DNA of 57,919 nt from Basidiobolus meristosporus CBS 931.73 (taxonomy: Eukaryota > Fungi > Basidiobolomycota), in contig MCFE01000560.1 of assembly GCA_002104905.1 (NCBI GenBank), positions 1-57,919 on the forward strand, written 5' to 3'. Position 1 is the first letter of the stretch; every line of letters begins with the position of its first letter. The position numbers were made by a program, and so were the translations under genes. Below, piece by piece: positions 12,059-57,919 of this stretch. The notes under the pieces are model-generated. The model was given only the letters and a program-made list of their open reading frames with translations. It did not search any database and was not told the origin of the DNA.

Positions 12059-13245
12059 ACAAGTATGTTGACAGCTGGTACTAAACATATATGAGGCAAC
12101 TGGATACAGTGGCTGATAGACTAGATTCAATGGCCCAGAGAAATTAGAAAATAGTGCAGAAGCAGGATGAGCAGATAGGATGTGTAGAGGAATCAATATT
12201 TCAGGTAAAGAAAGCAGTTTCTTTGCTGCAAAGAAGGAACTCAAGTTGCTCAATGTATAGCCAAGGATTGAGACACTTCACAATGGCACAGCAGAAGAAC
12301 ACTGTAAAGTCTCTGAAGCACAACAATGGTACTCAAGGATAAAACTCACAGAAAACCTATCACAGCATGGGAGAGAGAAGCTGCAGTGTCTATACTAAAG
12401 CCTGAAAATCAAAAGACATTGGGGATCCATGTAGTTGTTAAGTGCATGATGAACAGTGGGCTAATATTCAAGAGGCTGTTAGAAGTCAAGTGTGCCAGCA
12501 CCTTAAGGCCAGCATATCACAGCACTATCAGGAGCTCATGGTCAAGCAGAATGTACTTGACTTGTTCCATGTACACTAACCTGGATTCATATAAGCAAAC
12601 AGATACTGGGCCAGCATTGGTATGCTGTGAAAGTGTTCACGCCTAGCAGAAACTTTCAAAGGTAGAAAACAAGGGTGCAATGGCTAAAAACCAGCAGCTT
12701 CTTCAACAGTTAGTTACAAGCAGGGCCAATAACTCAAAACAGGCATCAAAGAAACATCAGGTAGCTGGAAGAGTGCTTATAAGGGACAAGCAGGCCAATA
12801 CAGATGCAATGGCATATCCTTTATTGGGGAGAAAGTGTAGTTCCACTCCAGAAGCACTAATTTAAGGCAGCAGTGAAGGACCTGTTGCAATTTTAGAAGT
12901 GATTTGGATATAAGGAACTTATCAAGAAATAGTGATAATAGTTGAACTGTTGTTTATTCATAAAGAAGCTCAGTATTTATACCTTTGTAGAAGTAATACA
13001 GCTGCAACACTAAGTAGGGAGGGTTTCTCAATATTCAGGAGCATTCTGTAACAGTTTCAGGGTTAGTACATAATGTTTGGTAATAGTGCTAATATGATCC
13101 TGACTATAGGGGAATAATCATAAGATCATATATCTGAAGAAAGTGGCGAAGTTAAGGCAGTAAATGAGTCCTACAGTGACTAAGACTAGCCTAGAATTGT
13201 TAAGTAAATTTTTAGCTGCTGAATGATACCAAATAGTCCAATATT

Positions 13246-17235: not shown

Positions 17236-18439
17236 TGTTGCAATTTAAGAAGTGATTTGGACATAAGGAACTTATCAAGAAATAGTGATAATAGTTGAAC
17301 TGTTGTTTATTCATAAAGGAGCTCAGTATTTATACCTTTGTAGAAGTAATACAGCTGCAACACTAATTAGGGAGGGTTTCTCAATATTCAGGAGCATTCT
17401 GTAACAGTTTCAGGGTTAGTACATAATGTTTGGTAATAGTGCTAATATGATCCTGACTATAGGGGAATAATCATAAGATCATATATCTGAAGAAAGTGGC
17501 AAAGTTAAGGCAGTAAATGAGTCCTACAGTGACTAAGACTAGCCTAGAATTGTTAAGTAAATTTTTAGCTGCTGAATGATACCAAATAGTCCAATATTTC
17601 AACAGGACTTACAATTGACAAGGAGGCATGAAAAAAAGCTGCAATCCTCACCAATTAGAGCCATCAGCCTTGAATAGGCTGAATCCCATAATAGCCACAA
17701 AGTATTAATAAAAAGAAAAGAGCTATTTTCTCAACAGTTGGAAGCACTGCCAGGTGGGCTACACTCCAGAGAGGCAGATGAGTCTGGAGAGAAAGGCAAC
17801 TTGTCTGACACAGACTCCACATACTCCATTGAAGACAGAGTGGAGATCCCACTGACAGACAAAGCAATAACATCAAGAGCTCACAAGACTGTCACAACAC
17901 CTATGGTGAGATTCTGGGCAATATAGGAGAAAGGGCATTACAGCAGCAGCAATTTTTATTTCAAGGTGGATTTTAATGGAGTTACCACTGAAGTGAGAGG
18001 CTGGGACTGATGCTGGTGTTGGGTATAGAGAGAAGTATAGGTCAGTACAAATTGAAATTGGGTTAGAACCTAAGATTGAAAGGAACCAAACCAAATTGCA
18101 TGCATGAGAAGAGCATCATTTGAGTCAGGAAGTAAGGAGTAAGAAAGATTCAATGGGCAATCAATGTACACAAACATAAGAGGTGGTTGAGTGTCTGGGA
18201 TCAAGAGTGCAAGGATTGGCTGAGTCCTAATCAAAAGCAACCTATGTATTGTTGCAATAAAATATTTTGAGCAAGTTTTTTTGTGAAATCTGGAGTACAA
18301 TTTTTTGGATGGTCTTTGCATAGTTGCCTCATTGTATTAATACCACTTAGTCATAGTACTTAAATCTTGTTACAGCCTTTCAATGGGATCATTACAATTA
18401 CTTTTCATGAGGGTCAGTGGTATGGTGAATTGACTGAAG

Positions 18440-21400: not shown

Positions 21401-21530
21401 GAGCAAGCTGTAGGCTGCTAATCTGTCATTACAATGACAGTAAAGGTTTGCAATTGGGCTGTCAGAACACCATCAATTTTTTGCCATACTATGCAAATAG
21501 ATAAATTTGGCAGCTAGATCTGCTCAAACA
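18440..21530 (+). pseudogene. Tnp2-type transposase relic U3, interrupted by a MITE
   Basis: Reverse-complement collinear with 52850-55240 (DLDSYLYSVL, ISDTLAISKIAGFSGQN, LGAMHLLINNIPIL). Confidence 0.75.
19209..19941. mobile_element. Fold-back/MITE element (733 bp) with ~347-bp inverted arms
   Basis: Arms 19209-19555 and 19596-19941, 40-bp spacer, ends AGACTTG...CAAGTCT. TSD ATT (or TATTA if the ends are G..C). The host transposase sequence rejoins on removal. Confidence 0.9.
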
Positions 21531-21559
21531 AATATAGAGTGCTTAAAGATCACTGGAAT

Positions 21560-21898: not shown

Positions 21899-22870
21899 AG
21901 TTGTGAAAATACATGATTCCACCTATATATTCACCTATCTTAGTCACTTAGATCATGACCTTCATATGTCAGGGAATACTGACCAAAATCCTTGTTAGGA
22001 TTTACTTAAAATATTTTCACCAAAACATCAGGCACCCAGAACATGAAAAATTCTCAAAGTTGTGCAAACAGCCTCAAACTTTGCACACATGTACTTGGGG
22101 CCATCTTAAACCTATTATATGTACTTGTTATGCCAAGACCTTGTAAAAGTGTAAATACTACTCTTACATTCAATAAATCATTAAGTGCAAACCACCTAAT
22201 CTACTTGTCCTCCTATATCACTTCTGGTATCTCCAAACCTTACAATAGGTTGTGAGCCCCAAGCTGTCACTTGCTGCAATTTCTACTACTGCAATTGCAG
22301 ATATTTTTCCCTTTGCTGGAAAGCCTATGAGAATTTTCATCTTGGAATTCTGCGCATTAGATAATAATTGAGATATTGAGAGTTGTCAATTTTGAGAAAC
22401 TTGGAATTCAGCTGATATTATGATGGTATTTTGCTGGCTTTTTCTTATGTTTTTTCTTATGGAGAAGTTGAATGAATATACCTATTAAGTGTGGAAGGTG
22501 AAGATGGAGATGCTGCTACAAGAAAGATCCCTTTTGGATGTTGTTGTGGGACAAGAATGCCCTCCTAAGAATGTGGGTGAGGAATCCATTATGCACTGGA
22601 AGCAAGAACAAAGTGCCTTTGACTTCATGGCCTTAATGTCAAGGACAAATTGCTAATTTAATGCCCAAGATCCAAAACAGTAGAGAATGCCTGGAGAGTA
22701 TTAAGAAACACCTACTAGTCATCTTCAGCTGCTAAGAGAACGCATCTTAGACAAAAATTCTTGACTACAAAGATGCTGCCAGGAGAAGAAATAAAAAATC
22801 TAATTATCAGAACTGCCCTGCTGGTGGGTGTGATGAAATCTGTGGGAAATACTGATTACTGATAAGGATT
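21899..22870 (+). mobile_element. Degenerate copia B 5' end (LTR, PBS, gag start)
   Basis: 21899-22247 resembles the reverse complement of the B LTR, followed by GGTTGTGAGCCCCAAGCTGTCAC and gag-like sequence homologous to 52000-52440. Confidence 0.7.
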
Positions 22871-30742: not shown

Positions 30743-33236
30743 CAAGTAGAGATTTGGCCAGACCATTTGGTTTAATTTGGACCAAATGGTCTAATTTAAT
30801 ACAATTGTTTTTTCTGGATGGGTGTCTTACTTTGTTTATTTCATATCATATTCTGATAAACAAGAATCTGAATATTATTTTTTGGAGTTGTTTTGATAAT
30901 TTGTCATATTTGTTTTATCTTTTCTTAAGACTTGAACCATGCCTCCTGCCAGTAAATATCTTGATGTTAATGTGCGTGTATCAGTATCCAAGCGATTTAT
31001 CAAACATAAGGAAGTCAAACAACTTTTATCTCTGCGTTTTGACTGGAATACACCTGGTTTGAGCTTCAAGGGAGTTACCACTGCACGCTCAACAGTCAAT
31101 GGCAATTTGAAATATGATGTCATTTTGGATCTGGTACTGGTGATTACATTGACTCTTTCACAAAACTGTTTAAAGTACATCAAGACTAACGGTAATGATA
31201 CCTAGGGAAACATTGAACCTGCAACTGGTAATACTACCAAGAGTATTGTTACTGAAGACTTATTGGAGGATGCAATCCAAGATGAGGAGCAGGAGGAAGA
31301 TGAAATTGACCTTACTGCAGCAGACACCTGGATAACTGGGGAAGTATATATTGATTCCCGTACAAGTGGGCCAGCTGATGGTATTGCCTCCTTGAAAGCT
31401 TGGTTAAATATGAAAAATGCTAGAAATGCCTCACCACTGGATTATTTCTTGTTCTTCCTTCCTTTAGATCACTTTTGCACTATTGTTTGGAGGATTAATG
31501 CTTATGCAACTAGCATTGGCCCCTGGACTGACATTACATTTGCCAAGTACATGATGTGGATTGCATTAATCAACCATTCCAACAAAAAAGCTTACTGGAA
31601 GCAAGGCTCTTCACATTTCTTAATGAACATTGACTTTACGGAATATATGTTGTATAGAAGATTTAAAGAGATTCTGAAAATGCACGTTCTTGAAATCCCT
31701 TCCCAAGAACATCAAGAAATTGATGCTCTTTATCAAATTAGATCAACTACTGACGCCTTTAATGAACACATGAAAACTTGTTTAGAGCCCTGCAAGTATT
31801 TAGTCATTGACAAATCAATGATTCAATGGTTAGGAGCTGGTTTGCCCAATGTTAAGAAAGTTCCAAGGAAGCCGCATCCCATCAGACAGGAGTTCAAGAC
31901 TTTAGCAGACCATCACACTGCTTGTATCCTGAGAATAGATACAGTGAATGATTGGTTACAGAAGGAATAAGACAATGATCCTGGTATGTCCAAGTTGACT
32001 TCCACTGTGAAGCGATTAGTCAAGCCTTGGTTTGGTACTGGCCATACCATTATTGCTGACTCTTGGTTTGGATCCCTAAATATGACAATGATGCTGGCTG
32101 AACTTGGTCTGTATTCCATTATGCAAGTGACTAAGCGCTGCTACTGGCCATGTGGTATGCCCACCACCAATATTGTTGCCAGTGTTGGCAGCTTGTATGG
32201 TGCTCACTTTACTATGAACAAGACAACAAGGAGCGGGAGAATCTTTGTCTGCGCCTACCATGATTGCAAGATCAAAGCATTTATTTCTTCTTGCAGCACA
32301 ACAAGGCTCACTGGATGGAGAACTTTTGTAGGGGACAATGGTGAGGTGATAACCTTTCAGCAACCGGAAGTGGTTGAAGAATATGAGACCCATAAAAGTA
32401 AGTAGAATCCTGTCTTGAAGAAACAACATGTGCTCCATTTACTATATTTGTAGGTTTGGTTGATGCTGCCAATAACCTTTGAGATACTTTGACATCTTAT
32501 CATGATGTTATATCTACAGAAAGATGGGAGATGCGTTTCTACGGCTTCATTCTGGGTATCTGCGAAGCCAATGCCTATAGCTCTTATCGTACATTTTCTT
32601 ACCAAAAGCGTGGTGTATCTCATTTCTCTTTCAAGGATATTCTAGCATACAATTTCTTGCAATATTGTAAGAATTTGGCTGGTTCAGACATCAAGGGGCC
32701 CTTGGGTAGTCAGAGGCAACTCAGAAGTGATGAAAATCACACTTACCTGTTGATGAGTAAAGGTTATGGCTCAAAGCACTGTAGATTAGCTTGCAAAACT
32801 TGTACTGCCGCTCATGTTACAGGCACTAAGGTTGAGTTTTCATGCAGTTGCAACCCTGGCCACCCAATGTGTAAAGACTGCTATACCAGGCACTTGAAGG
32901 TGGTATATGAAAAAACAAATTATGCTCAATAATTCTTTGCAGTTAGTAGGATTGGCTATTAAATGTTTGAAATATAATTGCTTAAAGCCATACCCATTAT
33001 TCATCAATGAAGTGTTAGACCATTTGGTCCGATTAAAACTTGCCAAAAGTTGCTTCAGTAAAGGCAATATAAGACAAGGTATTTGCAACCATTTTGAAAA
33101 AATCAAAATACCAGCACAAAGTGCATACCAGAGAGATTTCATAAACTTCATTTAGACTTCATATATCCTTGCTATGAGGTCAAAATAATTTAAATACAAT
33201 TGGACCATTTGGTCCAATTGGGCTAATCTCTACTTG
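30743..33236 (+). mobile_element. piggyBac-like DNA transposon, complete ends
   Basis: TTAA at 30739-30742 and 33237-33240. Perfect 12-bp TIR CAAGTAGAGATT plus subterminal GACCATTTGGTC palindromes. The copia LTR rejoins on removal. Confidence 0.93.
30939..32932 (+). pseudogene. piggyBac (DDD) transposase with C-terminal Cys-rich domain, one intron and 3 nonsense codons
   Basis: ORFs 30939, 31263 and 31986 share one frame. VIDKSM, IADSWFGS, and after splicing 32398-32453 HKSLVDAANNL*; then CRLACKTC...CSCNPGHPMCKDCYTRH. Stops at 31203, 31968 and 32480. Confidence 0.85.
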
Positions 33237-38558: not shown

Positions 38559-39229
38559 TTGAAAGCAGCAGTAATCAGAATCCTCCCTACTGGAGAATTA
38601 GTAGTCTCCTTCAAGATGTCAGAAAATAATGAATGGAAGAATGCTATGCAGCAAATGCTGGCCCAACCACAATGTTACTACAAATTCTCAGCCAGCTGCA
38701 ACAAGTGGTGATTACTAAGGCATAGAACCATGAAAGTCCTGTCAAGAGCAATCTTAGTCTGGGGGTAAATCAGTACTCTGGTAAAGTCAGTGAGGCCTTA
38801 GCTCTTTCATGCAGAAGAAGCATTCAGGAAAGAAAGAACTACACTACAAAGCCAAATGCACTGTTCAGCTTCCTACTTGGCAGATGCAGCTTTTCAATGG
38901 TACCCATAAAGGATCAGGTCAGCAGGCTTGATGGGATGCTCTATTATTGGTATCTGGGATGTGCTTACATTGCAACTCTGGATGCTTCTAAACCTCCTTA
39001 TCAGTTAAAGGGAGCTGAATACACTTGGTCAGGACAGAATGGCTTGGGAATACATAAATGAGTATAGGTGTTTACTCAGCAAAGCTGAAAGAATGAATGC
39101 TCTTGCCCTATAAAAAACTATTGAGATGATCCCATCAAAAGGCCATCAAAAGTTAAAGTCATGTGACTAATGGTTACTGATTTTATCAGGACACCATACC
39201 AAGACCATTGAAAAATTATTGCACCTCAG

Positions 39230-40140
39230 AAGCAGATCACCAATGCCAGCTTGACGCATCTACAGCTGTTGTGGGAGAAGTTTGTGATGGGATTTGAGTG
39301 GCTATACTACAGGCATGAAGCTGAATGTGTAGATCTCTGCGCTACTGTATCCATTCTGTTCTCCATCTTGCACAGTGTGTGGAGAATGTTGGGCCTAGCT
39401 ACAACTTTTGGGAGTTTCCTATGGAGCAGATGTGTGGGGAGATAGGAAGACAAGTTAAGTCGCAGTTACTAACATATTCCAATCTAATCAAGAATATTAC
39501 CTTCAAGTCTGTCATGGATGGAATGAGTTGGCACATAGAGGACAGCCAGGAAGAGTTGGAAAATACTGAGGACAAATGTGCACATGGTGATACCTATGCC
39601 TATGGCATTAAGAAGCTAAGCAGCCCCAATGCATGGGTAATCAGTTAAGTAATTCAAAGTTGGGTTGGGTGCAACAAGTAACTGATTTTTATCAGGAAAC
39701 TCTGCTAAGGTATGCCAGTGTAGTGGGGTGACAGTGACACCCACTGACAGATGTGCTCACTCCCATATTTACTACTAAGGTTATTGCACCCAGTGAACAC
39801 CCCACACACAAAACACTTGAGAGGTGTTGGACATATCTCTCCCTTGGACTTATACACCACAACACTGGATGTCTCATTGTCACAAGACAACTTCTACACC
39901 ATTCAATATGGAATTCACACAAACAAAAGCCAGAGCGCACCTATAAGAGGACTAGAATCCAGCAGGGAGAAGAAATATATTGGCTAAATACCAAGAAGTT
40001 CTTTGCAGATATTCCGGAGGTAGTCATGTCAGAAGTGGCAACAGCCAAGCATTTGTTTGCAAGATATATATGTTACTAGCAGTACCAGGTGTATGGCAAC
40101 TTTGCAAGTATCACACTAAAAAGCCATAAAGTTGAGGTGA
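39230..40140 (+). pseudogene. Tnp2-type transposase 3' relic U5
   Basis: NFWEFPMEQMCGEIGRQVK...IYWLNTKKFF matches 53200-53950. Confidence 0.8.
39719..39864. repeat. 146-bp mini solo LTR-like insertion
   Basis: TGTAGTGG...CCACAACA, absent from U7 (ATGCCGGAT). Flanked by CCAG and CTGG, consistent with a duplicated CCGG. Confidence 0.75.
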
Positions 40141-40319
40141 TAAAAGACCACAACAATACCATGCAAATATCATCACAGCACCAATAAAGTATTGTCAAGC
40201 TTTATTCCTTTATTTGGTTGTAAAATTAGCAAATCACCATCATGATCCCATCATAAGATCATCAGGAGGGTCTCTAATTCCAAGCTGCTGGTATTATGAT
40301 GGTCTCTAAGTAAGATCCT

Positions 40320-44559: not shown

Positions 44560-45190
44560 GTTAACATCTACTGGTAAATGATGTAATGTTGTAGCTAGAG
44601 AAGTGGCATGCTTCTACTAATATCAGTAATGGGGTCTTTGAAGCTTTATTACTACTTCTTGCCTAAATCATACTGGGATGCAACTTACCATATACATGGT
44701 ACAAGTGGACAACTGTCATGTGGCTGGCAACATATGATCCAGAGATTGTCCTGATTCCAGCATGTGTTAACAGTTGCATGGTATTCACATCAAAAAATGC
44801 TACCATTGCAATGTGCTCAGATTGTCAGGAATCCACCACCATTGAGGGAAAACATTTTTCACACTCCAGATATATTCCGGTCGTACCCTGTCTGAGGAAG
44901 CTGATGCAGTCCAACAAATATTGCAAAGCTATACAGTACTGCACTCAGTATAAATCAAGTACAAACATATCTGATATATTTGATGGCAAACATTACAAAC
45001 AGCTAAGAAGCAAGGGCTACCTTGAAGGTATGTATGACCATGCCTTTTCCTTAGCACTTGGTTGATTCTCATCAAACAAGTACTCTACCAGCAAATCCTG
45101 CTGGCCACTGATTCCCATCAATCTGAATCTGCCACCCAGCTTACAGTATCCAAGCAATAATTTGATTGTAGACTCACTGGTATCTGGAGG
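44560..45190 (+). pseudogene. Tnp2-type transposase fragment U6
   Basis: MWLATYDPEIVLIPACVNSC...FDGKHYKQLRSKGYLEGMYDHAFSLAL. Confidence 0.8.
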
Positions 45191-46290
45191 TAGCTCCTTG
45201 TTTTTATCACTTCCAGGTCCTTCACTGCTACTTTGGCCAAGTACTTGTTAAGTGGAGCTACACTATTTGCTTGGTAAATGTTGTACTGGTGCATCTGTGT
45301 CTGCCTGCTTGTCCCCAATTGGCATTCTTCCAGCTACCTGATGTATCTGTTGTATCCATGAGAAAAGTGTAATAAAACTCTTGAATGAGTTAACTGATCC
45401 TAAGTAATGACTAAGCGCAGAATCTTAGAATTGTTAAGAGTGACAGAAATATTAGCAGAGAAGTTCTGGTCTAATATTGGTGTTGTATATAGTTGAGTTG
45501 GGCTACAAAGGTAACAGAGTTGGTTTGCTATACAGGCTAGGCTTGGTGTTCTTAGGAATGCTAGATATGCTAGGCTTGGGTGGAAACTAGAATGGAATTG
45601 TTGAATTCTTAATTTTGCTGAGGCACAATCTTAATTTTGCTGAGACACACACTAAACCAAAAGGTTCAGTAATCTTTACTAATATTTTTCTGACCAAGTT
45701 GAATTAGTAAGCACCAAGAGACTGGACTAATTGAAATCTGTTTGGGTGCTGATATGTGCATAAGATAAATGAAAATTGTGTCATTAATTAGCTGATGTCT
45801 TGGCAACTACTAAGTGGTTGGATGGATCTCAGATGACTAATCCTTTGGAAAGGCTTAGCAGATCAGTTGAGGACATAATGACCACTTGAAAATTGATCAG
45901 GTGTGACAGCTAAAAATAGACTCTGAGAAGTGATAAAAGAAACCATTACAGGGATAAGTTTTGTTTGGGTTAGGGAAAATCAGTTAGGGTACTAGATTTT
46001 CTAATGGAGTAAATTGGCTAAGTTTTAAATGTTGATGCACAACAGTATCTTTGATGCTTGTCTGGAGCTTTCAGCCCTGCTTGTAATGCGCTCTTGAGGA
46101 AGATACTCATTTTTAGCCATGACACCCTTGTTCTCCTGTCTTTGTTAGCTTCTGCTATTCTTGAAACACTTTCTAAGCAAACTAATACAGGCCCAAAATC
46201 TGTTTGCTTGCTCAAATCCAGGATAATGCTTATGGAACAGGTCAATCACATTCTGCTTGGCCTTGAGTTCCCAATGGTCTCAGCAATACT
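45190..46290 (-). pseudogene. ORF2 fragment (minus), split by a solo LTR
   Basis: Reverse complement matches 56770-57150 and rejoins across TSD GTATC. Confidence 0.7.
45348..46044. repeat. 697-bp solo LTR of a third family (C)
   Basis: TGTTG...CAACA with exact TSD GTATC (45343-45347, 46045-46049). Non-coding and AT-rich. Confidence 0.88.
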
Positions 46291-48123
46291 TGGAAATAGT
46301 CTAAAATCTAGATGAGGAGATAATATATGTAGAGCAAACAATTTCCCAGGCAAAGAATGCAGTATCTTTGCTGCAATAAAGGAACTCAAGTTACTCAATT
46401 TCACAGCCAATAATTGAGCCACTCCCCAATGTAACAGCATAGGAGTACTGTAGAGTATCTGAAGCACAACAACAGTACCCAAAGATAAAGCCTGCGGAAA
46501 AACCTATCACATCATTGGAGGGAGAGAATGTTGTGTTTGTGCTCAAGCCTAAAAATCAAAAGACATTGAAGATTCATGAAGTCATTGTGTGCAATAATGA
46601 AGAGTGGGCTAAAATTCAAGAGGCTGTTAGGAGTCTAGCACAGTATCACCCTAAGGCCTGCATACCATGGGACCATCAGGAACTCAAGGCCAGTCCAATG
46701 CACTTAACATATTGCATAGGCATTCTCTTGGATTCAAGTAAGCAAACAGAGTTTGGTCCTGTGTTAGTATGCTTACAAAGTATCTCATGAATAGCAAAAA
46801 CTATAAAAAGCAGAAGAACTATGGTGCTATGTCTAAAAATTAGCATCCTCCTCAAGAGCTTCCCACAAGCAGGGCTGAAAGCTTCAAACAAGCAGCAAAG
46901 AAACATCAGGTAGCTGGGAGCATGCCTGTTAGGGAAAGCAGGCAGAAGCAGAAGCATCTGTGCAGCATTTATCAAGGAGAAAATGTAGTTTAATACAAAA
47001 AGCACTCAGTTACAACAGCAGTGAAGGACTTGACAGTGATAGGAGCCTGCAGCTTTCTCAGGAACCTGTCACAAGCAGGGCTGGAAGGTCCAAACAAGCA
47101 GCAAAGAAATGTTTGGTTGCCAAGAAAGTGGCAGCAACAGACAAGTAGACAAAAATGGATGCACCATTTCAGCATTCATTAAGGAGAAGGCAAAGTACTA
47201 TATAAGAAGCACTTGGCCACAGTAGCAGTGAAGGACTTGACAGTGATAAAAGCCTGCAGCTATCTCAGGAGCCTGTCAGAAGCGGGGCCATTATTTCCAA
47301 GCAAGCAGCTAAGAACTTTCAGGTTGCGGGAGTAGTGCTGGCAAGGGACAAGCAGACATAAGCAGATTGACCAGTGCAGCATTCATCAAGGAGAAACAGA
47401 GCATAATACAAGAAGCTCTCAGCAAAGGTAGCAGTGAAAGACCAAGCAGCAATAGCAGTAAAGGTAAAGTGAATAAGGTGTACCCAAGCCAGAAGCAGGG
47501 CAGAGTGAGAAAAAAGCTGCAGTTCTCACCATATTACACTGTCTGCCCAGAACAGGCTGAATCCTATAATAACCAAGAAGAATCATCAACAAGACATCAG
47601 CTGCTTTCTCAAGTGTTGCAAGTGCAGCCAGCTGAGCTGCACCCCAGTGAGGTAGATGTGTTTGCAGAGAAAAGCAGTTTGTCTATCACTGCCTCCGCAT
47701 CCTCCATTATTGACAGAGTGGAGACTATGCTGTCTACATGCTGCATGGATGAGAGGCTTGCTACAATGACAACATGGTCTTTTTTCTCTTCTCTTGCAGT
47801 GTTCAATCACTGTAGTCTTGCCAATGGATCATATGTCTTGATGTTTACATCATAATTCTATTGTAACAATTTTTTGTCAATATTCATGCCAGCTTAAGAC
47901 CGTCTTCTATAGAGATCTTTGCACCTGCATGAATGTAAAATTAAATGATGGCCCACCATAGTAAGCATTATAAATACAGTGGTGGCACAATATGTACACA
48001 TATTTTTAACACTATATCCCCTTTGGTTTGGCCCACCTCTATATAAACACCACCAGAAAATATAGTAAAGTTGTCTAGTCTCAAGCAAACCCACTGCAGA
48101 CAGCAGCAGAAGAATGGCCAAGC
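46290..48123 (+). pseudogene. ORF2 relic with three 207-bp repeats, fused to the 5' transposase/intergenic/ORF2-start block of the next unit
   Basis: 46290-47715 matches 56370-57615; 47716-48123 matches about 55655-56050. Confidence 0.75.
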
Positions 48124-51100
48124 TGTTGTAAGAGTCTTGGAGATATTGGAAGTGATTTGGGGAACAAGTAGATTATGTGGTTCTCACTTAATGATTTATT
48201 GAATGTAAAAGCAGTATTTATACTTTTACCTGGTCTTGGCATTACAAACATGTAGAATAGGCTAAGGAAGGTCCCAAGAACATGTGTGCAAAGTTTGGGG
48301 CTGTTTGGACAACTTTGAGAATTTTCATGTGCTAGGTACCTGGTATTTTGATGAAAATATTCTAGGTAAATCCCAACAAGGAATTTGGTCAGTATTCTCT
48401 AGGATTTAAGGGCAATAATCTAAATGACTAAGTTAGGTGAGTATTTAGGTGGAATTACAAATTTTTACAACACTCCCACTCAGCTGAATGTTCATACTGA
48501 CTAGTCCTAATTTTGACCTAAGATATTCAAACTTGTCTCTAGCTAATGGTTTGGTAAATATGTCTGCAATCATTTCATCTGTAGGGCAGTAAACTAAGCT
48601 CACTAAGTTATTCTCTATAGCTTCACATATGAAATGATGTCTAATATCTATGTGCTTGGTTCTAGCATGAAAAGTTGGATTTCTATCTAATTGTATACAT
48701 CCTTGATTACGTTGAAATAAAGTAATAGGTGTTTTTTGACATAGGCCTAAATCTGTAAAAAGTTTTCTTAACCATGTTGCTTCTTTTGTAGCTCCACAGG
48801 CTGCCATATACTCTGCCTCTGTGGTGGAAAGTGCTATGGTTGGTTGCTTTCTCAAATTCCATGAAATTACTCCTTTACAGTAAAGAAAAGTGTATCCTGT
48901 GGTGGATCTTCTGTCTTCCAAATTTTGTCCCCAATCAGCATCAGAGTATCCCACAAGATCCTGTTCTGAGTCCTCATAAGTGTATCTTAAGCAGATATCA
49001 GCAGTTCCTTTTAGGTATCTAAAAATCCGCTTGACTGCTGCAATATGATCTGATCCATAGTTCTGATTATGTTGGCTGACAACTCCCACTGAAGATGAGA
49101 TATCTGGACATGTTCCAAGCATGATATACATCAGACTGCCAACCATAGATTGATAAGGAAAGTCAGGGCTTTCAGATGGCACCAAGCTCTCTTGATTTGG
49201 TTGAGTTTTGACCAAGTTAAGGTTTGTCTCCATTGGGGTAGCTGCTGGTTTACAGTCTTCCATTTGGTACTTCTTTAGTATATCTTGAATATACTTGGAT
49301 TGACTTAGGGTGATAGTCTGGGTACTTCTGTCTATGGAGAACTTAATCCCTAAGTAGTAACTAAGTTCTCCTAGATTGGACATCTTGAGCTCCTTGGATA
49401 GGCGGGATTTAGTCTCTTCCAATGTTTCTAGGTTATTGCCAGCTATAATAAGATCATCCACATATAGAGCTAATAGAGCTGGATTTGCTCTATCTGGCTT
49501 ATAGTATATACTATAGTAAGCATTACTTCTTTTGAAACTCAAAGATTCCAAATAAGAATCTATCTTGCAATTCCAGGCTCTTGGTGATTGTTTAAGACCA
49601 TATAGTGACTTTTTAAGCCTGCAGACCAAATGGGGGTTATCTTGGTCAACAAACCCATCAGGCTGGTCCATATACATGTCCTCATCAAGTTCTCCACTCA
49701 AAAATGCAGTTTTTACATCCATTTGATGAATAAAAAACTTATATTTGGCTGCATTAGCCAAAATTAATCTGATGGAATTAAACTTGGCTACCAGTGCAAA
49801 GGTCTTGGTATAGTCAAGTCCTTTTGTTTGAGAGTATCCTTTGGCTACAAGTCTGGCTTTGTATCTTTCAATTGTACCATCAGCTTTGTATTTTGTCTTG
49901 AAGACCCATCTGCATCCAATTGATTTTTGGTTGATTGGTAAATTGACTAAGTTCCAAGTTTGATTTTCCAATAGGGCCTGATATTCCTCAGTCATTGCAG
50001 ATCTCCAAAACTTTGTCTGAGGGCTATTTAGGGCCTCTTTTACAGTCTGGGGCTCATCAATATGGACTGAATAGGCATAGGCTAAGTTTGTACCCTCATT
50101 GATATTGTAATTAGGGCTATTTCTTGTGCAATTGGATCTCCGGGCATTTGATACTGGAATGATCACTTCAGGGATATTCCTGGGCACTGATTCTGGCTGA
50201 ACCATGGTTGTAGAGTCCTCTGGAGTGAAAAGATTCTCATTGTATTGCTCTGATTCAAACCTGACAATTGGTGGACTTGAGATCAAATTTGTGTCATCAT
50301 CTGATGCCATTTTTGGTGAAAATTTGAATTTTCATCAAACAACACATCCCTGGACTTGATCAGCTTTTTGCTTTGGTATTGTAGAGTCTGTATGCCTTAC
50401 TCTCATTGCAGTAGCCCAAAAATATGCATTTTACATTTTTTGGCTCAAATTTTGACTGATTTCCAACCAGTTTTTTGGCATATGCTGTACGCCCAAATAT
50501 TCTTATATGTTCTGCACTTGGTCTGTATCCATGCCATGCTTCAAATGGAGTAGAATTACAAAGTATTCTTTTATAACTCCTATTTTTAAGGTATACAGCA
50601 GTGGCAACTGATTCCGCCCAAAAATATAGGATAATTTTTGATCATGGATCATAGATCTTGCCATATCAATTATTGATCTGTTAGCTTGTTCTGCTACTTC
50701 ATTTTGCTGTGGGGAGTATGGTACAGTAGTCTCTTGCTCTATCCCTTGATTTTTGCAGAAGTGGATGAAGAGTTTTGAGGTATATTCTCCATCATTGTCA
50801 GTGCATATTTTCTTGATTTTTTCACCAGTTTCTCTCTCCACCATGGCTTTAAACTCCCTGAACTTAGACAGAGCTTCTTCCTTTCTCTCCATGAAGTAGA
50901 CCCATGTGTATCTTGTATAATCATCAATAAAAGTAATTAAATACTTCATCCTGCCTAAGGATAAATTTTGCATAGGTCCACACAGATCTGAGTGAATTAG
51001 ATCTAATTTGTTCTAAGTTTTGATTACCCAGAGCTCTTGAATGGTTGTCTGGCTTGTTTCCCATATATGCAGGCTTCACAGTGCTCCAAATTAGCTGGGG

Positions 51101-52803
51101 GATCAATTTTCACTCCAGCAATTAGCTGATCTTTGATCATTTTGTGCAAATAATCAAAATTAATGTGTCCAAATCTCCTGTGACAAAGCATTGGTGTTTC
51201 TTCATTTAAGTTACTTATATTGGCTTCCAAATATGATAGAATATAAGTCAACTTGTATAGATTCTGATCAATGATGCCCAAAGCAATATGGGCACCATTT
51301 TGATCAGTGATCCTGCATCCAGAATTGTCAAAACTGAAACTGAGTCCTTCTGCTGTGGCCTTGCTTACAGAGAGTAGGTTCTGGGCTATTTCTGGTACAT
51401 AGAGTACTTCTTTAAAGGTCAGTGTATGGCTTCCTTCACTGCTTCTAAGGTTTACTTGGATGGTTCCTTCTTGCACTGCATCAAGTGTTCTATTGTCACC
51501 CACAAAAACCTTCTTAATTAGAATTTCTTGATATTGGGTAAAAAGTTCTTTTTGGTGTTTAAAGTGTTGAGATGCTCCAGAGTCAATATACCACGCCTGA
51601 TAATCCTTGTTTGTGGTCATATTTAGTTCAGATATGAACAGTCTATCTTCAGTTGTTGCAGCATTTCCATATTCAGGCTTCTTTTGCTGATAATCTCTCT
51701 TTTTGAGACACTGGTCTGATGTGTGTCCTTTCCTTTTGCAGTAGTTACAAAACAGGTTGCTGTTGCCTTTGTAGGGTCTTGGGTACCTCCTTTGTTGGTT
51801 ATCATTGCTTATTAAAGCGTATTCTTCTTCCTTCTTATTGGCGCTTGTTTTTCTTAATTCTTTGTCCAGGAGCCTTCCATATACATAATTTAAGGTCAAA
51901 TCTTCAGTTCTGGACTCTAGGGCTGATACAAGGCTTTGAAAATTGTCTTTCAGGCTATTCAGGATGGTAACTATCACATCCTCATCAGTAGTTGGTACGC
52001 CCACAGATTCCATCTCATCTACCAGCAGGGTAATTCTGTTAATTAGATTTTTCATTTCTTCTCCTGGCAGCATCTTTGTAGTAAAGAATTTTTGTCTCAG
52101 ATACATTTTCTTGGCAGCTGAACATGACTGGTAGGTGTCTTCCAATGCTTTCCAGGCATTCTTTGCTGTTTTTGCTCTTGAGCATTGAATTAGCAATTTG
52201 TCCTTGACATTAAGGCAAATGCAGTCAAAGGCACTTTGTTCTTTCTTCTGGTACTTTAAGGCTTCCTCTCCCACTTTTTTAGGAGGGCATTTTTCTCCCA
52301 TGGCAATATCCCAAAGGCCTCTTTCTTGTAGCAGCATCTTCATCTTCACCTTCCACACTTGGTAGTTAGATCCATCCAACTTTTCAGCAGAGGAAAAAAT
52401 TCCAGTAATAGTAGTAGTAGAAATTGCAGAGAGTGACAGCTTGGGGCTCATAACCTGTTGTAAGAGTCTTGGAGATATTGGAAGTGATTTGGAGAACAAG
52501 TAGATTATGTGGTTTTCACTCAATGATTTATTGAATGTAAAAGTAGTATTATACTTTTACCTGGTCTTGGCATTATAAACATGTAGAATAGGCTTAGGAA
52601 GGTCCCAAGAACATGTATGCAAAGTTTGGGGCTGTTTGGACAATTTTGAGAATTTTCATGTTCTGGGTACCTGGTATTTTGGTGAAAATATTCTAAGTAA
52701 ATCCCAACAAGGAATTTGATAAGTATTCCCTAGGATTTGAAGGTGATGATCTAAGCGACTAAGTCAGGTGAATATTTAGGTGGAAATACAAATTTTTACA
52801 ACA
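48124..52803 (-). mobile_element. Ty1/copia B, full-length, defective, no matching TSD
   Basis: LTRs 48124-48472 and 52456-52803 (about 7% divergent by eye), PBS 52444-52455, PPT at 48473. Flanks are CAAGC versus ATTAT. Confidence 0.93.
48445..52440 (-). pseudogene. gag-pol: Copia B gag-pol
   Basis: LDGSNY, CNYCKRKGHTSDQC, WYIDSGAS, RRFGH, YVDD, DADWG, TEAEY, ADIFTKPL; the integrase region is frameshifted. Confidence 0.93.
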
Positions 52804-52831
52804 ATTATTGCAGTCTTTCAGCGCTCTATTA

Positions 52832-55756
52832 CTATTTTAAGTGGATCCAGTTGGCCAGGACTTCCAATTGCCTTATATGGCAAGAAACTTGATGGTATTT
52901 TGACGGCCTCACAGCGGGACTCTGGTGGCTTTTTTTTGGCAGTATGACGGCCTGCTGCTGGTTATGTATAATGCTACCATACCAATTTACTAAATGGTAT
53001 TTCCCTTTTCTACCTCCCCTTGTGCAGTTCATATATTCCACTGTAGAATCACCTTTCTTTATTTGCTTACCCACTACTTCCTTGGGTACTCCACATATAG
53101 TTCAAATCAAAAAAAATTATGGCCTCCTGCTTACTAACCTCTACAAACGCACACACCTGCCGCAATTGACATACTTCTATCACCTCAACTTTATGGCTTT
53201 TTAATGTGATACTTGCAAAGTTGCCATATACCTTGTACTGCTGGTAGCATATACATCTTGCAAACATATGCTTGGTTGTTGCCACTTCTGCCATGAATAC
53301 CTCCTGAATATTGGCAAAGAACTTCTTGGTATTTAGCCAATATATTCCTTCTCCCTGCTGGATTCTAGTCCCCCTTATAGGTGCGCTCTGGCTTTTGTTT
53401 GTGTGAATTCTGTATTGAATGGTGTAGAAGTTGGCTTGTGACCACAAGAAATCCGGCATATCTTGGTGGAGTTTTCCTGATCAAAATTAGTTGCTTGTTG
53501 CACCCAACCCAACTTTGCATTACTTAACTGATTACCCATGCATTGGGGCTGCTTAGCTTCTTAATGCCATAGGCATAGGTGTCTCCATGTGCGCATTTGT
53601 CCTCAGTATATTCCAACTCTTTCTGGCTGTCCTCCATGTGCCAACTCATCACATCTATGACAGACTTGAAGGTAATATTCTTGATGAGATGGGGATATGG
53701 TAGTACCTGCAACTTGACTTGTCTTCCTATCTCCCCACACATCCGCTCCATAGGAAACTCCCAAAGGTGAAGCAAGGCCCAATATTCTCCACACACCATG
53801 CAAGATGGAGTTGAGAATGGATACAGTAGTGGCAGAGATCTACACGTTCAGCTTTATGTTTGTAGTATAGCCACTCAAATCCCATCACAAACTCCTCACA
53901 CAACAGCTGTAGATGCGTCAAGTTGGCATTGGTGATCTGCTTCTGGATAAATATTCCTACAATGTCCACATATGACTCCCAATGCTTCCAATGTACTCTT
54001 GGTAGGAATGGCTTCAGAACACCACTTGAATAAATACATATCCAGATCATCCAGTCTTTGCATTTGTATTGTTGCATATGCGTATGAATATTAATTGGAG
54101 CCTTTGAGAAGTACTTAGGGTAGCGGATACTCTGTAATATCTTGCCAATTTTTTCAAATTTCTCCGGTATCTCAAAGGGCTCATTTAGCTTGAAATGCCC
54201 CATGTACAACTTAGTCATCAGTATAGGGATATTGTTGAAGAGCAAATGCATTGCTCCCAGTGGAATGCTTTTGCTCCAACAGATACCCTCTATCTTAAGT
54301 ATCTCTGGTTTCCAACTGATTCCATATTCTGGCCAATGGCTTATAGCTTGCCAACTTTGCTGCAATTGCATGCTTACCTCTGTACATTCTCTCTGTGGAA
54401 AGATGATGTTCTTAGTGCTGGTGTTTGGGTAATAATAATGTGTGTGAGTTATGGAGTAAATCCCTTGGATCTCACGCATTTGACAGTAATACCGTCCATT
54501 GTGCCCGGAAAAACCTGCTATCTTGCTGATGGCTGGGGTATCTCCAATGCAGATAATAATATGCGCTTTTACATGACGGCCATTCACCGTTATCCTGCTG
54601 GAAAGCATACAAAGTTCATTCGCAATGGATACAGGTAGCTATCCAGGTTGGGTGGTGATTTAGGCCCAGATACCAGTGAGACTACCATCAGATTATTGCT
54701 CTGATACCGTAAGATGGGCGGCAGATTCAGATTGATGAGAATCAGTGGCCAGCAGGATTTGCCGGTAGAGTACTTGTTTAATGAGAATCCATCAAGTGCT
54801 AAAGCAAAGGCATGGTCATACATACCTTCAAAGTAGCCCTTGCTTCTTAGCTGTTTGTAATGTTTGCCATTGAATATATTGGATATGTTTGCGCTTGATT
54901 GATACTGAGTGCAATACTGTATAGCTTTGCAATATCTGTCAGACTGCATCAGCTTCCTCAGATGGGGTATGACCAAAATATATATGGAGTGTGAACAATG
55001 CTTTCCCTCAATGGTGGTGGATTCCTGACAATTTGGACATGTTGCAATGGTAGCATTTTTGGATGTGAATGCCATGCAACTGTTAACACATGCTGGAATC
55101 AGGACAGTCTCTGGATCATATGTTGCCAGCTGCATGATGGCTGTCCACTTGTACCATGTACATGGTAAGTTGCATCCCAGTATGATTTTGGCAAGAAGTA
55201 GTAATAAATCCTCAAAGCCCCCATTACTGATATTAGTGGAAATGCGCTACTTCTCTAGCCACAACATCACATCATTCACCAGTAGATGGATTACTGGGCT
55301 CACTTGGCTCCATAAAGTATCCTTGGCATTTGTCTCAATGGGTGTTGTCTCATTGCATACAGGGATTTGACTGGGCTCATATGTGGTACTGTTGTTAGGC
55401 AAGATAGGCTCAAAATCCATTAGTGAACCTTCTTTGTCAGAGTTATCACTCTGCATGCCATATTCAGAAGGCTGAGGTGAGCCTAAAGGCATCACAAACT
55501 CACCTGACTCAGTTTGCGCAAGGTGACAAAGACAGCCAGGTGCCAATATAGAAGTATCAACTGGCCAGCAAGATAATGTTGGTACAGTAGTGACCAATGA
55601 ATGGTCAAATATGACTTGGGTGGCAAAACACTGGTGGTGATCCTTGTAATATTTCCTATGCTGTCTGCATGCTTCATGGCTGAGAGACTTGCCACAATAG
55701 CCACATGGTCTTTTTTCTCTTCTCTTACAGCATTGAGTCAAAGTAGTCTTGTCCAT
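52832..55756 (-). pseudogene. Most complete Tnp2-type (CACTA/EnSpm-like) transposase, unit U7
   Basis: N-terminal CGYC...C..H zinc finger, ALALDGFS, CWPLILINLNLPP, GPKSPPNLDSYLYP, CIGDTPA, GAMHLLFNN, WEFPMERMCG. About 6 stops/frameshifts. Confidence 0.85.
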
Positions 55757-55978
55757 GGGGCAAACAGTTTGACCTTCAACAATGTAATGCTATTATATCA
55801 CTTTTTGGTCAATAGTCATGTGAACTTAAGACAGTCTTGTACTTGAGACATTGCACCTACATGAATGTAAGATTCAATGGTGACCTGCCATAGTAAGCAT
55901 TATAAATAAAGTTGTGGCACCACATACACACGTATATGTAACACTATTTCCCCTTTGGTTTGACTCACTTCCATATAT
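55757..55978. promoter_or_regulatory. Putative bidirectional promoter between transposase and ORF2
   Basis: 222 bp between divergent ATGs. TATAAATAAA at 55901; the block is conserved in U2 (about 11145-11365) and at about 47830-48045. Confidence 0.45.
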
Positions 55979-57919
55979 ATGCCGCCAAAAAATAAAGCAA
56001 AGTTGTCTGGTTCTCAACCAAACCCCACTGCTGACAGCAACAGAAGAATGGTAGGACATCAGCTTGCTTTGACATTCATTGCAACAAGCAGGGCTACATC
56101 CAAAAAAGGCCCTGTGGACAGTGTGCTCATTGAAGGTAATAATGCGGACTCCTCAGGCTCTCAGTCAAGTAGGCAATTGAGAACCTCTGTGGAGCCACAA
56201 GCTGACTGTTATGCTCAGGCAGATGAGAATTTAGCAAACACAGTACCCTCTGTTGAAGATCAGCAAGTGGCCATGATAACGTCACCACCACCCATATTAG
56301 CAAGTATGTTCTCAGCTCATACCAAAGCATTAATGAAGCAATTAGGTGCAGTGGCTGATAGGATAGATGTAATGGCCCAGAGAAATCAGGAAGTAGTCCA
56401 GAAACAGGATGAGCCAATAATATGTGTAGAGCAATCAATATCCCAGGTAGAGAAAGCAGTATCTTTGCTGCAAAGAAGGAACTCAAGTAGCTCAATGTCA
56501 CAGCCAAGAATTGAGCCATTTCCTGATGTAACAGCAGAGAAACACCATACAGTCTTTAAAGCACAACAACAGTGCACAAAGATAAAGCCCACAGAAAAAC
56601 CTATCACAGCATGGGAGGGAGACAATGTGGTGTTTATACCAAAGCCTAAAAATCAAAAGACATTGAAGATCCGTGAAGCTGTTGAGTGCAATAATGAAGA
56701 GTGGGCTAATATACAAGAGGCAGTCAGAAGTCTAGCATGCCATCACCTTAAGGCCGGCATACCATGGGACCATCAGGAACTCAAGTCCAAGCAGAATGCA
56801 CTTGACTTGTTCCATGAGCATTATCCTGGATTCAAATGGGCAAACAGATTTTGGGCCAGCATTGGTATGCTAAGAAAGTATCTTGAGAATAGCAGAAACT
56901 ATCAAAGGCAGAAGAACAAGGGTGCCATGGCTAAAAACCAGCAGCTTCCTCAAGAACCTGTTACAAGCAGGGCCAAAAGCTCCAGACAAGCGTCAAAGAG
57001 ATGTCAGGCAGCTGGAAGAGTGCCAATTAAGGACAAGCAGGCAGACATGGATGCACCAGCACAACATTTATCAAAAAAAAAGCGTAGTACCACTCAAGAA
57101 GCACCCAGTCAAAGTAGTAGTGAAGGACCTGGCAGTGATAAAAACCAGCCACTTTTACAGGAGCCCATCACAACTACAGTTGAGAGCTCAAAACAAGCTG
57201 AAAAGAAATGTCAGGTTGCCAGAAGAGAGCCAGCAAGGGACAAGCAGGCCAAAACAGATGTGTCAGAGCAGAATTTATCCAGGAGAAAATGTAGTTGTTT
57301 ACAAGAAGCACTCAGACAAAGTAGCAGTGAAAGACCTGGCAGTGATAAAGGAAAAGGTAAAGGGAAAAATGTCTACCCAAGCCTGAGACAGGGAGGCATG
57401 CCAAAAAAACTGCAGTTCTTGCCAATTAATGCTGCAAGCCAGGAACAAACTGAATCCCATCATAGCCAAGAAGAATTACCAACAAGAAAACAGCTGTTTT
57501 CACAAGACTTGGAAGCGCACCCAGTTGAGCTACACTCCAGCAAGGTAGATGAGTTTGCTGAAAAAGGCAATTTGTCTACCACAGCCTCCACAGCCTCCAT
57601 TGTTGACAGAGTGGAGATCCCACTGACAGACAAGGCTACAACGTCAAGAGCTCAAAAGACTATCACAATGCCTTCAGTGGAGTTTTGGAACATTAATAGG
57701 CACACCAAGAGGTTGCAGCACTTCTTCAAGAGCAGTGCTCAAGAAAATGTACTGGAATATTGCAAGGATTTATTGCAAAGACTGGCAGATGAGGAGCTAG
57801 ACCTTGCAGTGCCAGCTGAAGACCAGGACATGTGGGAACCAGTGAATGAACAGTGGCATAAAGCCGTTGGGTTCCTGCTAAAGTCATGGAACCAGAGCGT
57901 TACAGCAGAAATACATATT
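55979..57919 (+). CDS. Intact ORF2 (at least 647 aa, 3' end beyond the window), uncharacterised transposon-associated protein
   Basis: Translated codon by codon: MPPKNKAKLSGSQPNP...coiled-coil-like segment...EEWANIQEAVRSLACHHLKAGIPWDHQELKSKQNALDLFHEHYPGFKWANRFWASIGMLRKYLENSRNYQRQK...two 69-aa repeats...WHKAVGFLLKSWNQSVTAEIHI. No stop; an in-frame TGA lies just upstream. Confidence 0.85.
   Translation, partial: MPPKNKAKLSGSQPNPTADSNRRMVGHQLALTFIATSRATSKKGPVDSVLIEGNNADSSGSQSSRQLRTSVEPQADCYAQADENLANTVPSVEDQQVAMITSPPPILASMFSAHTKALMKQLGAVADRIDVMAQRNQEVVQKQDEPIICVEQSISQVEKAVSLLQRRNSSSSMSQPRIEPFPDVTAEKHHTVFKAQQQCTKIKPTEKPITAWEGDNVVFIPKPKNQKTLKIREAVECNNEEWANIQEAVRSLACHHLKAGIPWDHQELKSKQNALDLFHEHYPGFKWANRFWASIGMLRKYLENSRNYQRQKNKGAMAKNQQLPQEPVTSRAKSSRQASKRCQAAGRVPIKDKQADMDAPAQHLSKKKRSTTQEAPSQSSSEGPGSDKNQPLLQEPITTTVESSKQAEKKCQVARREPARDKQAKTDVSEQNLSRRKCSCLQEALRQSSSERPGSDKGKGKGKNVYPSLRQGGMPKKLQFLPINAASQEQTESHHSQEELPTRKQLFSQDLEAHPVELHSSKVDEFAEKGNLSTTASTASIVDRVEIPLTDKATTSRAQKTITMPSVEFWNINRHTKRLQHFFKSSAQENVLEYCKDLLQRLADEELDLAVPAEDQDMWEPVNEQWHKAVGFLLKSWNQSVTAEIHI

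What the first reader, a model, noticed from the sequence alone, without database searches (positions are those of the whole stretch)
55979..57919. Hidden intact ORF of at least 647 codons beside a dead transposase
Seen: the only large undisrupted non-retroelement frame in the window, absent from the track. Its partner transposase has about 6 lesions in 2.9 kb (about 4 would be expected in 1.94 kb at that rate), the other ORF2 copies here are broken, and it is strongly CpG-depleted yet has no nonsense codon. It has a coiled-coil-like segment and a compact W-rich helical domain. Established: TE accessory proteins can bind termini (TnpA) or counter methylation silencing (VANC of VANDAL elements). 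Inference: ORF2 is under selection, either domesticated or acting in trans as a DNA-binding or anti-silencing factor.
Basis: partly seen in the sequence, partly recalled or inferred. Interest (0 to 1): 0.8.

Follow-up and report, generated by a model that had tools for sequence, protein, structure and literature searches.

The report
Orphan accessory gene of fungal CACTA-like transposon
The open 647-codon frame is real: it is the best-kept copy of an unnamed second gene of a two-gene CACTA-like jumping element of the fungus Basidiobolus. Its intactness beside a broken transposase is within what chance allows, so there is no good evidence that the host has adopted it.

Summary
The frame 55979-57919 (+) is open for 647 codons and runs off the window; relatives suggest about 42 more codons. 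It starts 222 bp from a Transposase_21 (CACTA/EnSpm-type) gene on the other strand, head to head. That layout is kept in three related loci whose proteins are only 30-55% identical, so ORF2 is a long-standing transposon gene.

Only a handful of relatives exist in 1.84 billion representative proteins. All are Basidiobolus proteins or unnamed metagenome contigs. There is no Pfam, PDB-sequence or fold match.

The neighbour is less dead than reported. It has three real lesions: one Trp-to-stop and two 1-bp deletions. The other "breaks" are a conserved 52-nt intron and the natural stop codon. Given three lesions, the chance that all fall in the transposase is 0.19.

Both genes of this copy have the shortest branch and show past purifying selection. 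This fits a fairly recent insertion from a long-active lineage. Selection on the family is supported; selection on this copy, or domestication, is not.

The function is inferred only: a TnpA-like oligomeric DNA-binding or regulatory partner. First readers flagged the same family in at least ten other windows of this genome.

The parts
55979..57919 (+). ORF2, the accessory gene: 647 open codons cut by the window end, about 94% of an estimated ~690-codon gene
   Evidence: Translation has no stop. The N-terminus MPPK.K matches P0003. L003 and P0004 show about 42 further conserved codons beyond the window.
56291..56488 (+). Predicted long helix (residues 105-170), a candidate coiled coil
   Evidence: AlphaFold2 helix 11-76 of the fragment, with pLDDT 84-95 over most of it. 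Only coiled-coil noise in PDB and Pfam searches.
56651..56968 (+). Conserved Trp-containing helical domain (residues 225-330), the family's signature
   Evidence: Consensus KPxNQKTLK..C..WA.I.E.VR..A..L..W..Q..H..PGF..A..W across A, P0001, P0002, L002 and L003. Best phmmer hit P0001 has E = 2e-26 over residues 171-327. Four helices, pLDDT 56-82.
56932..57349 (+). Two in-frame tandem units of 207 nt (69 codons) in the basic, Ser/Gln-rich disordered middle
   Evidence: blastn self-match 56932-57142 against 57139-57349, 71% identity. Copy C carries an extra 206-nt unit at the same place.
57695..57919 (+). Start of a second conserved, Trp-containing C-terminal domain (residues 573-647), cut by the window end
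   Evidence: phmmer hit P0004, E = 2e-5, residues 573-640. The domain continues in L003 and P0004.
55757..55978 (.). 222-bp spacer between the two divergent start codons; likely bidirectional promoter with TATA-like boxes facing each gene
   Evidence: Sequence read. TATAAATA lies about 85 nt upstream of the ORF2 ATG. The head-to-head layout recurs in L001, L002 and L003.
53067..55756 (-). Transposase gene (Transposase_21 / tnp2 type), dead: one nonsense codon and two frameshifts
   Evidence: PF02992, 41 bits, E = 1.6e-10. Frame map. Lesions against copies B, E, F, G and L003. Natural stop at 53069-53067.
55247..55249 (-). Lesion 1: Trp codon TGG changed to TAG
   Evidence: F and L003 keep TGG. 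B has an independent TGA at the same codon.
54621..54622 (-). Lesion 2: 1-bp deletion specific to this copy
   Evidence: The base is present in B, E and L003. L003 reads through in one frame.
53765..53766 (-). Lesion 3: 1-bp deletion specific to this copy
   Evidence: The base is present in B, E, G and L003. The L003 ORF 6034-6480 reads through this point.
53477..53528 (-). Conserved 52-nt GT-AG intron of the transposase gene; not a lesion
   Evidence: GTTAAG...ACTAAT...CAG is shared by A, G and L003, and its removal joins the two frames (read by hand from that alignment).
52804..53066 (-). 3' non-coding end of the element, cut by a copia LTR at 52803
   Evidence: Lower conservation and no frame. 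LTR boundary.
48124..52803 (-). Copia retrotransposon abutting the element; not part of it
   Evidence: gag, integrase and RVT_2 domains. LTRs 91.8% identical, with no target-site duplication.

Best explanation
This is the least-decayed copy in the window of the second gene of a Basidiobolus-restricted, two-gene CACTA/EnSpm-type (CMC) DNA transposon. The transposase and ORF2 are transcribed away from each other from a shared spacer of about 200 bp.

ORF2 encodes an orphan protein. In order it has a basic N-terminus, a long helix that probably drives self-association, a conserved Trp-containing helical domain, a disordered basic repeat region, and a second conserved C-terminal domain.

Shown: it is a real, conserved transposon gene; its lineage was under purifying selection; the copy here is open while its transposase carries three point lesions.

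Inferred: the copy is a fairly recent insertion from a long-active lineage, and ORF2 escaped lesions by chance. Its role is probably like that of En/Spm TnpA, an oligomeric partner that binds the element's ends or promoter and helps or regulates transposition.
For: - The ORF is open for 647 codons.
- The transposase neighbour matches PF02992.
- The head-to-head layout recurs in L003 (B. meristosporus contig MCFE01000403.1) and in metagenome contigs L001 and L002, at 30-55% ORF2 identity.
- Relatives are only Basidiobolus proteins (ORX90044.1, KAK9738516.1) or ENA contigs: 5 hits in 1.84 billion representatives and 1 more by profile.
- Copy A has the shortest branch to all other copies in both genes.
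- On the A branch the transposase has N:S 52:42, against 482:171 pooled for decayed copies (p = 4e-4). ORF2 structured regions changed at 3.5% of sites against 11.5% in the disordered region (p = 1e-5).
- There are only 3 true transposase lesions. The chance that ORF2 has none is 0.11-0.19.
- Simulation with the empirical mutation spectrum gives 1.1 stops in ORF2 and 1.45 in the transposase per 1% neutral divergence. One observed transposase stop therefore fits about 0.7% post-insertion decay.
Against: - If the neutral phase is estimated from the transposase's N:S ratio (about 1.7-3.3% divergence, my own rough calculation) instead of from lesions, the chance of an unbroken ORF2 falls to about 0.07-0.005. 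A modest excess of preservation is therefore not excluded.
- All six other copies examined are broken.
- The last ~42 codons are unseen.
- The TnpA-like role rests on architecture and analogy only. There is no family, PDB-sequence or fold match, and the structure models are of low to moderate confidence.
Confidence: 0.7

Rival explanations
1. This particular copy is kept by selection after its transposase died. It either supplies ORF2 protein in trans to other family members, or it has been taken over by the host as a DNA-binding or anti-silencing factor.
For: - ORF2 has 0 lesions against 3 in the adjoining transposase.
- All conserved residues of the Trp domain are retained in A while other copies have lost some.
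- The spacer with its TATA-like box is intact.
- All six other copies seen are broken.
Against: - The contrast is not significant (0.11-0.19), and the locus was picked because it is open.
- The constraint on A's branch is shared by the transposase, as expected for a recently active element.
- The gene sits in a transposon nest, is multi-copy, and has no annotated full-length counterpart in public proteomes.
- First readers describe complete elements of this family elsewhere in the genome, so active sources of ORF2 probably exist.
Confidence: 0.12
2. The copy is already a pseudogene whose break lies in the unseen 3' end, or it carries inactivating missense changes. The open frame then has no present function.
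For: - About 6% of the gene lies beyond the window.
- 54 copy-specific non-synonymous changes were counted at informative sites.
- The partner gene is dead and a copia element cuts the element's end.
Against: The structured domains carry few copy-specific changes (9 non-synonymous in 402 informative sites), and all family-conserved residues are kept.
Confidence: 0.15
3. The open frame is a chance or non-coding feature, not a protein gene.
For: No Pfam family, and much of the protein is low-complexity.
Against: - 647 stop-free codons at about 40% GC.
- Homologues at E = 2e-26 with conserved motifs.
- A conserved start and a conserved position next to the transposase.
- Domain-specific constraint on this copy's branch.
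Confidence: 0.01

Closest known systems
TnpA of maize En/Spm and TnpA-like proteins of plant CACTA elements
   Same: It is a second, fast-evolving protein encoded by a Transposase_21-type element beside the transposase. TnpA binds element DNA, interacts with TnpD and reactivates the methylated promoter (as summarised in PMC1636069). Like TnpA, ORF2 has helical domains plus a likely self-association region.
   Different: There is no sequence similarity (Pfam scan). It is a separate gene on the opposite strand rather than an alternative splice form. The preprint 10.64898/2026.08.24.746577 reports TnpA-like proteins as restricted to flowering plants, with a DNA-binding domain of two tri-helical HTH motifs about 45 residues apart; that layout was not recovered here.
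TRC elements (animal and fungal CACTA-like transposons, SmTRC1 of Schistosoma mansoni; PMC1636069)
   Same: They have a Transposase_21 domain and CCC-starting termini; first readers report CCCTA termini for this family in other windows. They also have a rapidly evolving second protein (SmTRC-PrA) with no detectable relatives, proposed to play the TnpA role.
   Different: SmTRC1 products arise by alternative splicing of one transcription unit. Here there are two divergent genes with a shared spacer. The termini could not be seen in this window.
Fungal CMCT transposons carrying accessory TET/JBP dioxygenase genes (EnSpm, Plavaka, ESTA; PMC12730594)
   Same: They are fungal CACTA-related DNA transposons with an extra gene thought to help the element escape methylation-based silencing, in hosts that methylate or mutate repeats.
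   Different: ORF2 has no TET/JBP or any other enzymatic signature. It looks like a helical, partly disordered protein. Those elements are from Dikarya, not Basidiobolus.
VANC anti-silencing proteins of Arabidopsis VANDAL (Mutator-type) elements
   Same: A transposon-encoded accessory protein with sequence-specific action on its own family.
   Different: It belongs to a different superfamily.

Membership tests
CACTA/EnSpm (CMC) DNA transposon | DDE transposase with a Transposase_21 (tnp2, PF02992) domain | tested here: met
   Piece 54590-55135 (-) scores 41 bits, E = 1.6e-10, above the 28.6-bit cut-off. A metagenome relative, P0007, also carries PF02992.
CACTA/EnSpm (CMC) DNA transposon | Terminal inverted repeats starting CACTA/CCC, with 2-5 bp target-site duplications | not testable with these tools
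   The left end is cut by a copia LTR at 52803 and the right end lies beyond the window. Searches for ends in other copies were uninformative. CCCTA termini are reported only in unchecked first-reader notes.
TnpA-like accessory protein (plant En/Spm) | Sequence membership in a known TnpA or plant CACTA accessory family | tested here: not met
   No Pfam family at E <= 1 apart from noise. No PDB-sequence hit beyond coiled-coil noise.
TnpA-like accessory protein (plant En/Spm) | DNA-binding domain of two tandem tri-helical HTH motifs (10.64898/2026.08.24.746577) | tested here: inconclusive
   The model of residues 215-335 has four helices but a mean pLDDT of only 64.5. The best VIA-align Z is 5.0 and Foldseek finds nothing at E <= 0.001. 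The C-terminal domain was not folded.
TnpA-like accessory protein (plant En/Spm) | Self-association (dimerisation) | tested here: inconclusive
   A long confident helix is predicted. The two-copy complex job gave no verdict (score 0.01).
Domesticated transposon gene | Single-copy, syntenic orthologues without element ends, and purifying selection after the element died | not testable with these tools
   No eukaryotic genome collection could be scanned. What can be seen argues against it: multi-copy, inside a transposon nest, with constraint shared by the transposase branch.

The most novel reading that the evidence does not exclude
ORF2 founds an unrecognised, Basidiobolus-specific class of transposon regulators, unrelated in sequence to TnpA or VANC. 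It would bind its own family's ends or promoter, or counter 5mC-linked silencing and mutation. This copy would still be kept because it supplies the factor in trans after its own transposase died.
Probability: 0.1. Interest if true: 0.55.

Novelty: new variant of a known kind. Interest (0 to 1): 0.3.

Why it matters
Two-gene CACTA-type elements are best known from plants. A recent survey reports TnpA-like regulators as restricted to flowering plants, and in fungi and animals the DNA-binding domain is usually fused to the transposase. A separate, divergently transcribed orphan partner gene, conserved in an early-diverging fungus, shows that such elements acquired helper genes independently. It also gives a concrete protein to test for end-binding or anti-silencing activity in a genome that strips CpG from repeats.

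For this locus the practical message is more modest. It is an ordinary, fairly young transposon copy, and two of the transposase "lesions" are in fact a normal intron and the natural stop codon.

Tried and rejected
- **Database searches on ORF2.** The word search of 5.8 billion proteins with the whole ORF found nothing. A profile search added only P0008. The Pfam scans of ORF2, its parts and its relatives gave only noise. The PDB sequence profile search gave only coiled-coil noise.
- **Fold searches.** Foldseek and VIA-align on two AlphaFold2 models gave nothing above background: best Z 5.0, best Foldseek E 0.87. The structure library 'atlas' was not available. The ESM Atlas feature search returned only unnamed Basidiomycota clusters at the 0.90 chance-prone level.
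- **Self-association.** The two-copy complex prediction of residues 95-345 gave no verdict, with a score of 0.01. It counts neither for nor against.
- **Origin of ORF2.** It is not a duplicate of the transposase N-terminus, and its two domains are not detectably alike.
- **Copia LTR divergence as a clock.** The LTRs differ by 8.2%, but I rejected this as a clock for the element's age. There is no target-site duplication, and the two flanks belong to two different CACTA copies, so the pair is probably recombinant.
- **Element termini.** The search for them was uninformative.
- **Sampling more genomic copies.** A search with a transposase piece, meant to find annotated proteins, returned only two metagenome fragments.
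- **The scan's own notes.** Look-ups by place and by sequence gave nothing.

Full report
**What is there**

The + strand frame from the ATG at 55979 to the last base of the window has 647 codons and no stop. The nearest upstream in-frame stop is at 55961-55963, and 55979 is the only in-frame ATG after it. It is the longest ORF in the window. Nearly all other ORFs of 150 aa or more that were scanned are pieces of copia and gypsy retroelements, one is a piggyBac-like transposase fragment and two gave no Pfam hit.

The window is a nest of decayed transposons. GC is about 40% and CpG observed/expected is 0.20; in the ORF it is 0.11.

**The neighbour**

On the minus strand, starting at the ATG at 55756, lies a gene with a Transposase_21 (tnp2, PF02992) domain (41 bits). 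The two start codons face away from each other across 222 bp. The spacer carries TATA-like boxes for both directions.

I aligned this transposase with five other copies: B 7350-9248, E 18455-21549, F 44565-45187, G 39227-40146 and L003. Copy A carries three private lesions.
- A Trp codon is changed to TAG at 55249-55247. F and L003 keep TGG, and B has an independent TGA.
- There is a 1-bp deletion at 54621.
- There is a 1-bp deletion at 53765.

- 53528-53477 is a 52-nt GT-AG intron with an ACTAAT branch site. It is conserved in G and L003, and its removal joins the frames.
- The TAA at 53069-53067, shared with E, is most likely the natural stop. Conservation and coding character end there.

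The coding sequence is therefore 2,638 nt with three lesions. A copia LTR cuts the element's non-coding 3' end at 52803.

**ORF2 is a transposon gene of long standing**

tblastn finds four other ORF2 copies or fragments in the window (9239-10669, 11375-12883, 46278-47789, 17633-17965). All are broken.

A full HMMER scan of 1.84 billion representative proteins gave five hits. Two are Basidiobolus proteins: ORX90044.1 from B. meristosporus CBS 931.73 and KAK9738516.1 from B. ranarum. Three are from ENA metagenome contigs. A profile search added one more ENA protein. This agrees with earlier notes of the scan that the genome is Basidiobolus meristosporus.

The head-to-head layout recurs in every locus with enough sequence.
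- On the B. meristosporus contig L003 the transposase lies at 8138-5584 (-) and ORF2 at 8389-10528 (+). ORF2 is 55% identical to copy A.
- On the short contigs L001 and L002 the transposase N-terminus lies upstream on the opposite strand. There ORF2 is only 30-39% identical.

A layout kept over that much divergence marks ORF2 as an integral gene of the element family.

L003 and P0004 also show that the C-terminal domain continues for about 42 codons beyond the window. The full gene is therefore about 690 codons.

**The protein**

There is no Pfam family and no PDB-sequence relative beyond coiled-coil noise.

AlphaFold2 with a 12-row alignment predicts one long helix at residues 105-170 (pLDDT 84-95). 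It also predicts a helical domain around residues 239-322 at moderate confidence. A second run on the domain alone reached a mean pLDDT of 64.5. Foldseek and VIA-align found nothing above background.

The conserved core carries the motif KPxNQKTLK..C..WA.I.E.VR..W..Q..H..PGF..A..W. After it comes a basic, Ser/Gln-rich disordered stretch with two 69-codon tandem units; copy C has a third unit. A second conserved Trp-containing domain starts near residue 573.

ORF2 shows no similarity to the transposase. A two-copy complex prediction gave no verdict.

**Is this copy under selection?**

Copy A is closer to every other copy than they are to each other, in both genes. I counted changes private to each copy at sites where at least two other copies agree.

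| Gene, branch | Private changes / informative sites | N:S |
|---|---|---|
| ORF2, copy A | 80 / 1,055 | 54:26 |
| ORF2, four decayed copies pooled | 460 / 3,594 | 351:105 |
| Transposase, copy A | 94 / 1,583 | 52:42 |
| Transposase, decayed copies pooled | 653 / 4,554 | 482:171 |

The ORF2 contrast gives p = 0.09 and the transposase contrast p = 4e-4.

Within ORF2, A's private changes are unevenly spread. They affect 3.5% of sites in the helix, linker and Trp domain, against 11.5% in the disordered region (p = 1e-5). The decayed copies change evenly (p = 0.14).

So A's lineage spent most of its branch under purifying selection on both genes. That is the mark of an element lineage that stayed active, not of a host gene.

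The only argument for selection on this copy is the contrast between 0 and 3 lesions.
- Given three lesions spread over 2,638 + 1,941 nt, all three fall in the transposase with probability 0.19.
- A Poisson estimate gives 0.11.
- Simulation with the mutation spectrum taken from the decayed copies gives nearly equal stop risk per base in the two genes: 1.1 stops in ORF2 and 1.45 in the transposase per 1% divergence.

A rougher estimate of the neutral phase from the transposase's N:S ratio would give lower probabilities (about 0.07 to 0.005, my own calculation). It depends on an unknown baseline, so I give it little weight.

The locus was also chosen because it is open. First readers have noted this family, including apparently complete elements, in at least ten other windows of the genome (unchecked notes). 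CpG depletion adds nothing: 33 of 35 Arg codons are AGA/AGG and none is CGA.

**The copia clock**

The LTRs at 48124-48472 and 52458-52803 are 91.8% identical, which would imply great age. However, there is no target-site duplication. The left flank is the start of another CACTA copy, while the right flank is A's 3' end. The pair therefore probably comes from recombination between two copia insertions and cannot date copy A.

**Verdict**

The neighbour is dead, but by three lesions rather than six.

It is not supported at the level of this copy.

The most likely account is a fairly recent insertion of a two-gene CMC transposon in which chance hit one gene first.

By position, architecture and analogy with En/Spm TnpA and with SmTRC-PrA (PMC1636069), ORF2 most likely acts as an oligomeric DNA-binding or regulatory partner of the transposase. 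This step is inferred, not shown.

It is not a member of any known accessory family. A recent preprint reports TnpA-like proteins as restricted to flowering plants (10.64898/2026.08.24.746577). Fungal CMCT elements are otherwise known to carry TET/JBP genes (PMC12730594). The gene family itself is therefore a modestly new variant of a known kind.

Noticed in passing
window 55247-55249 and 8852-8854 (copy B): Two copies about 80% identical carry independent nonsense mutations (TAG and TGA) at the same ancestral Trp codon of the transposase. Copies F and L003 keep TGG. It could be mistaken for a conserved stop or a read-through site.
   Followed up: yes
window 9238/9239 (copy B) against 55604-55984 (copy A): Copy B has one clean deletion of about 380 bp. 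It removes both start codons and the whole spacer, joining the two genes back to back.
   Followed up: partly
window 48124-52803: The copia element's LTRs are 91.8% identical and there is no target-site duplication. Its left flank is the 5' end of another CACTA copy (47725-48117) and its right flank is the 3' end of copy A, which suggests recombination between two copia insertions.
   Followed up: partly
window 31263-31970 (+): A piggyBac-type transposase fragment (DDE_Tnp_1_7, E = 1e-20) lies among the retroelements.
   Followed up: no
window 55690-55756 (-) and L002 181-456 (-): The transposase N-terminus carries a conserved Cys-x2-Cys ... His ... His motif (KRPCGYCGK.LSHE..R.HRKY) shared with a relative of deep divergence. 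It is a likely zinc-finger DNA-binding module of the transposase itself.
   Followed up: no
window 57350 against 46.9-47.3 kb (copy C): The number of 69-codon units in the disordered middle of ORF2 varies between copies: copy C has an extra 206-nt unit and copy D has deletions.
   Followed up: partly
L001, L002, L004 (ENA assemblies ERZ27270915 and ERZ27236668): The only non-Basidiobolus-labelled relatives of both genes come from two metagenome assemblies. Their source was not determined; they may hold Basidiobolus-like fungi.
   Followed up: no
window 21900-22203 and 52501-52802: A copia LTR of the same family lies beyond the 3' end of the transposase in copy E as well as in copy A, about 350 bp downstream in E. 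This could reflect an insertion preference or an old segmental duplication.
   Followed up: no
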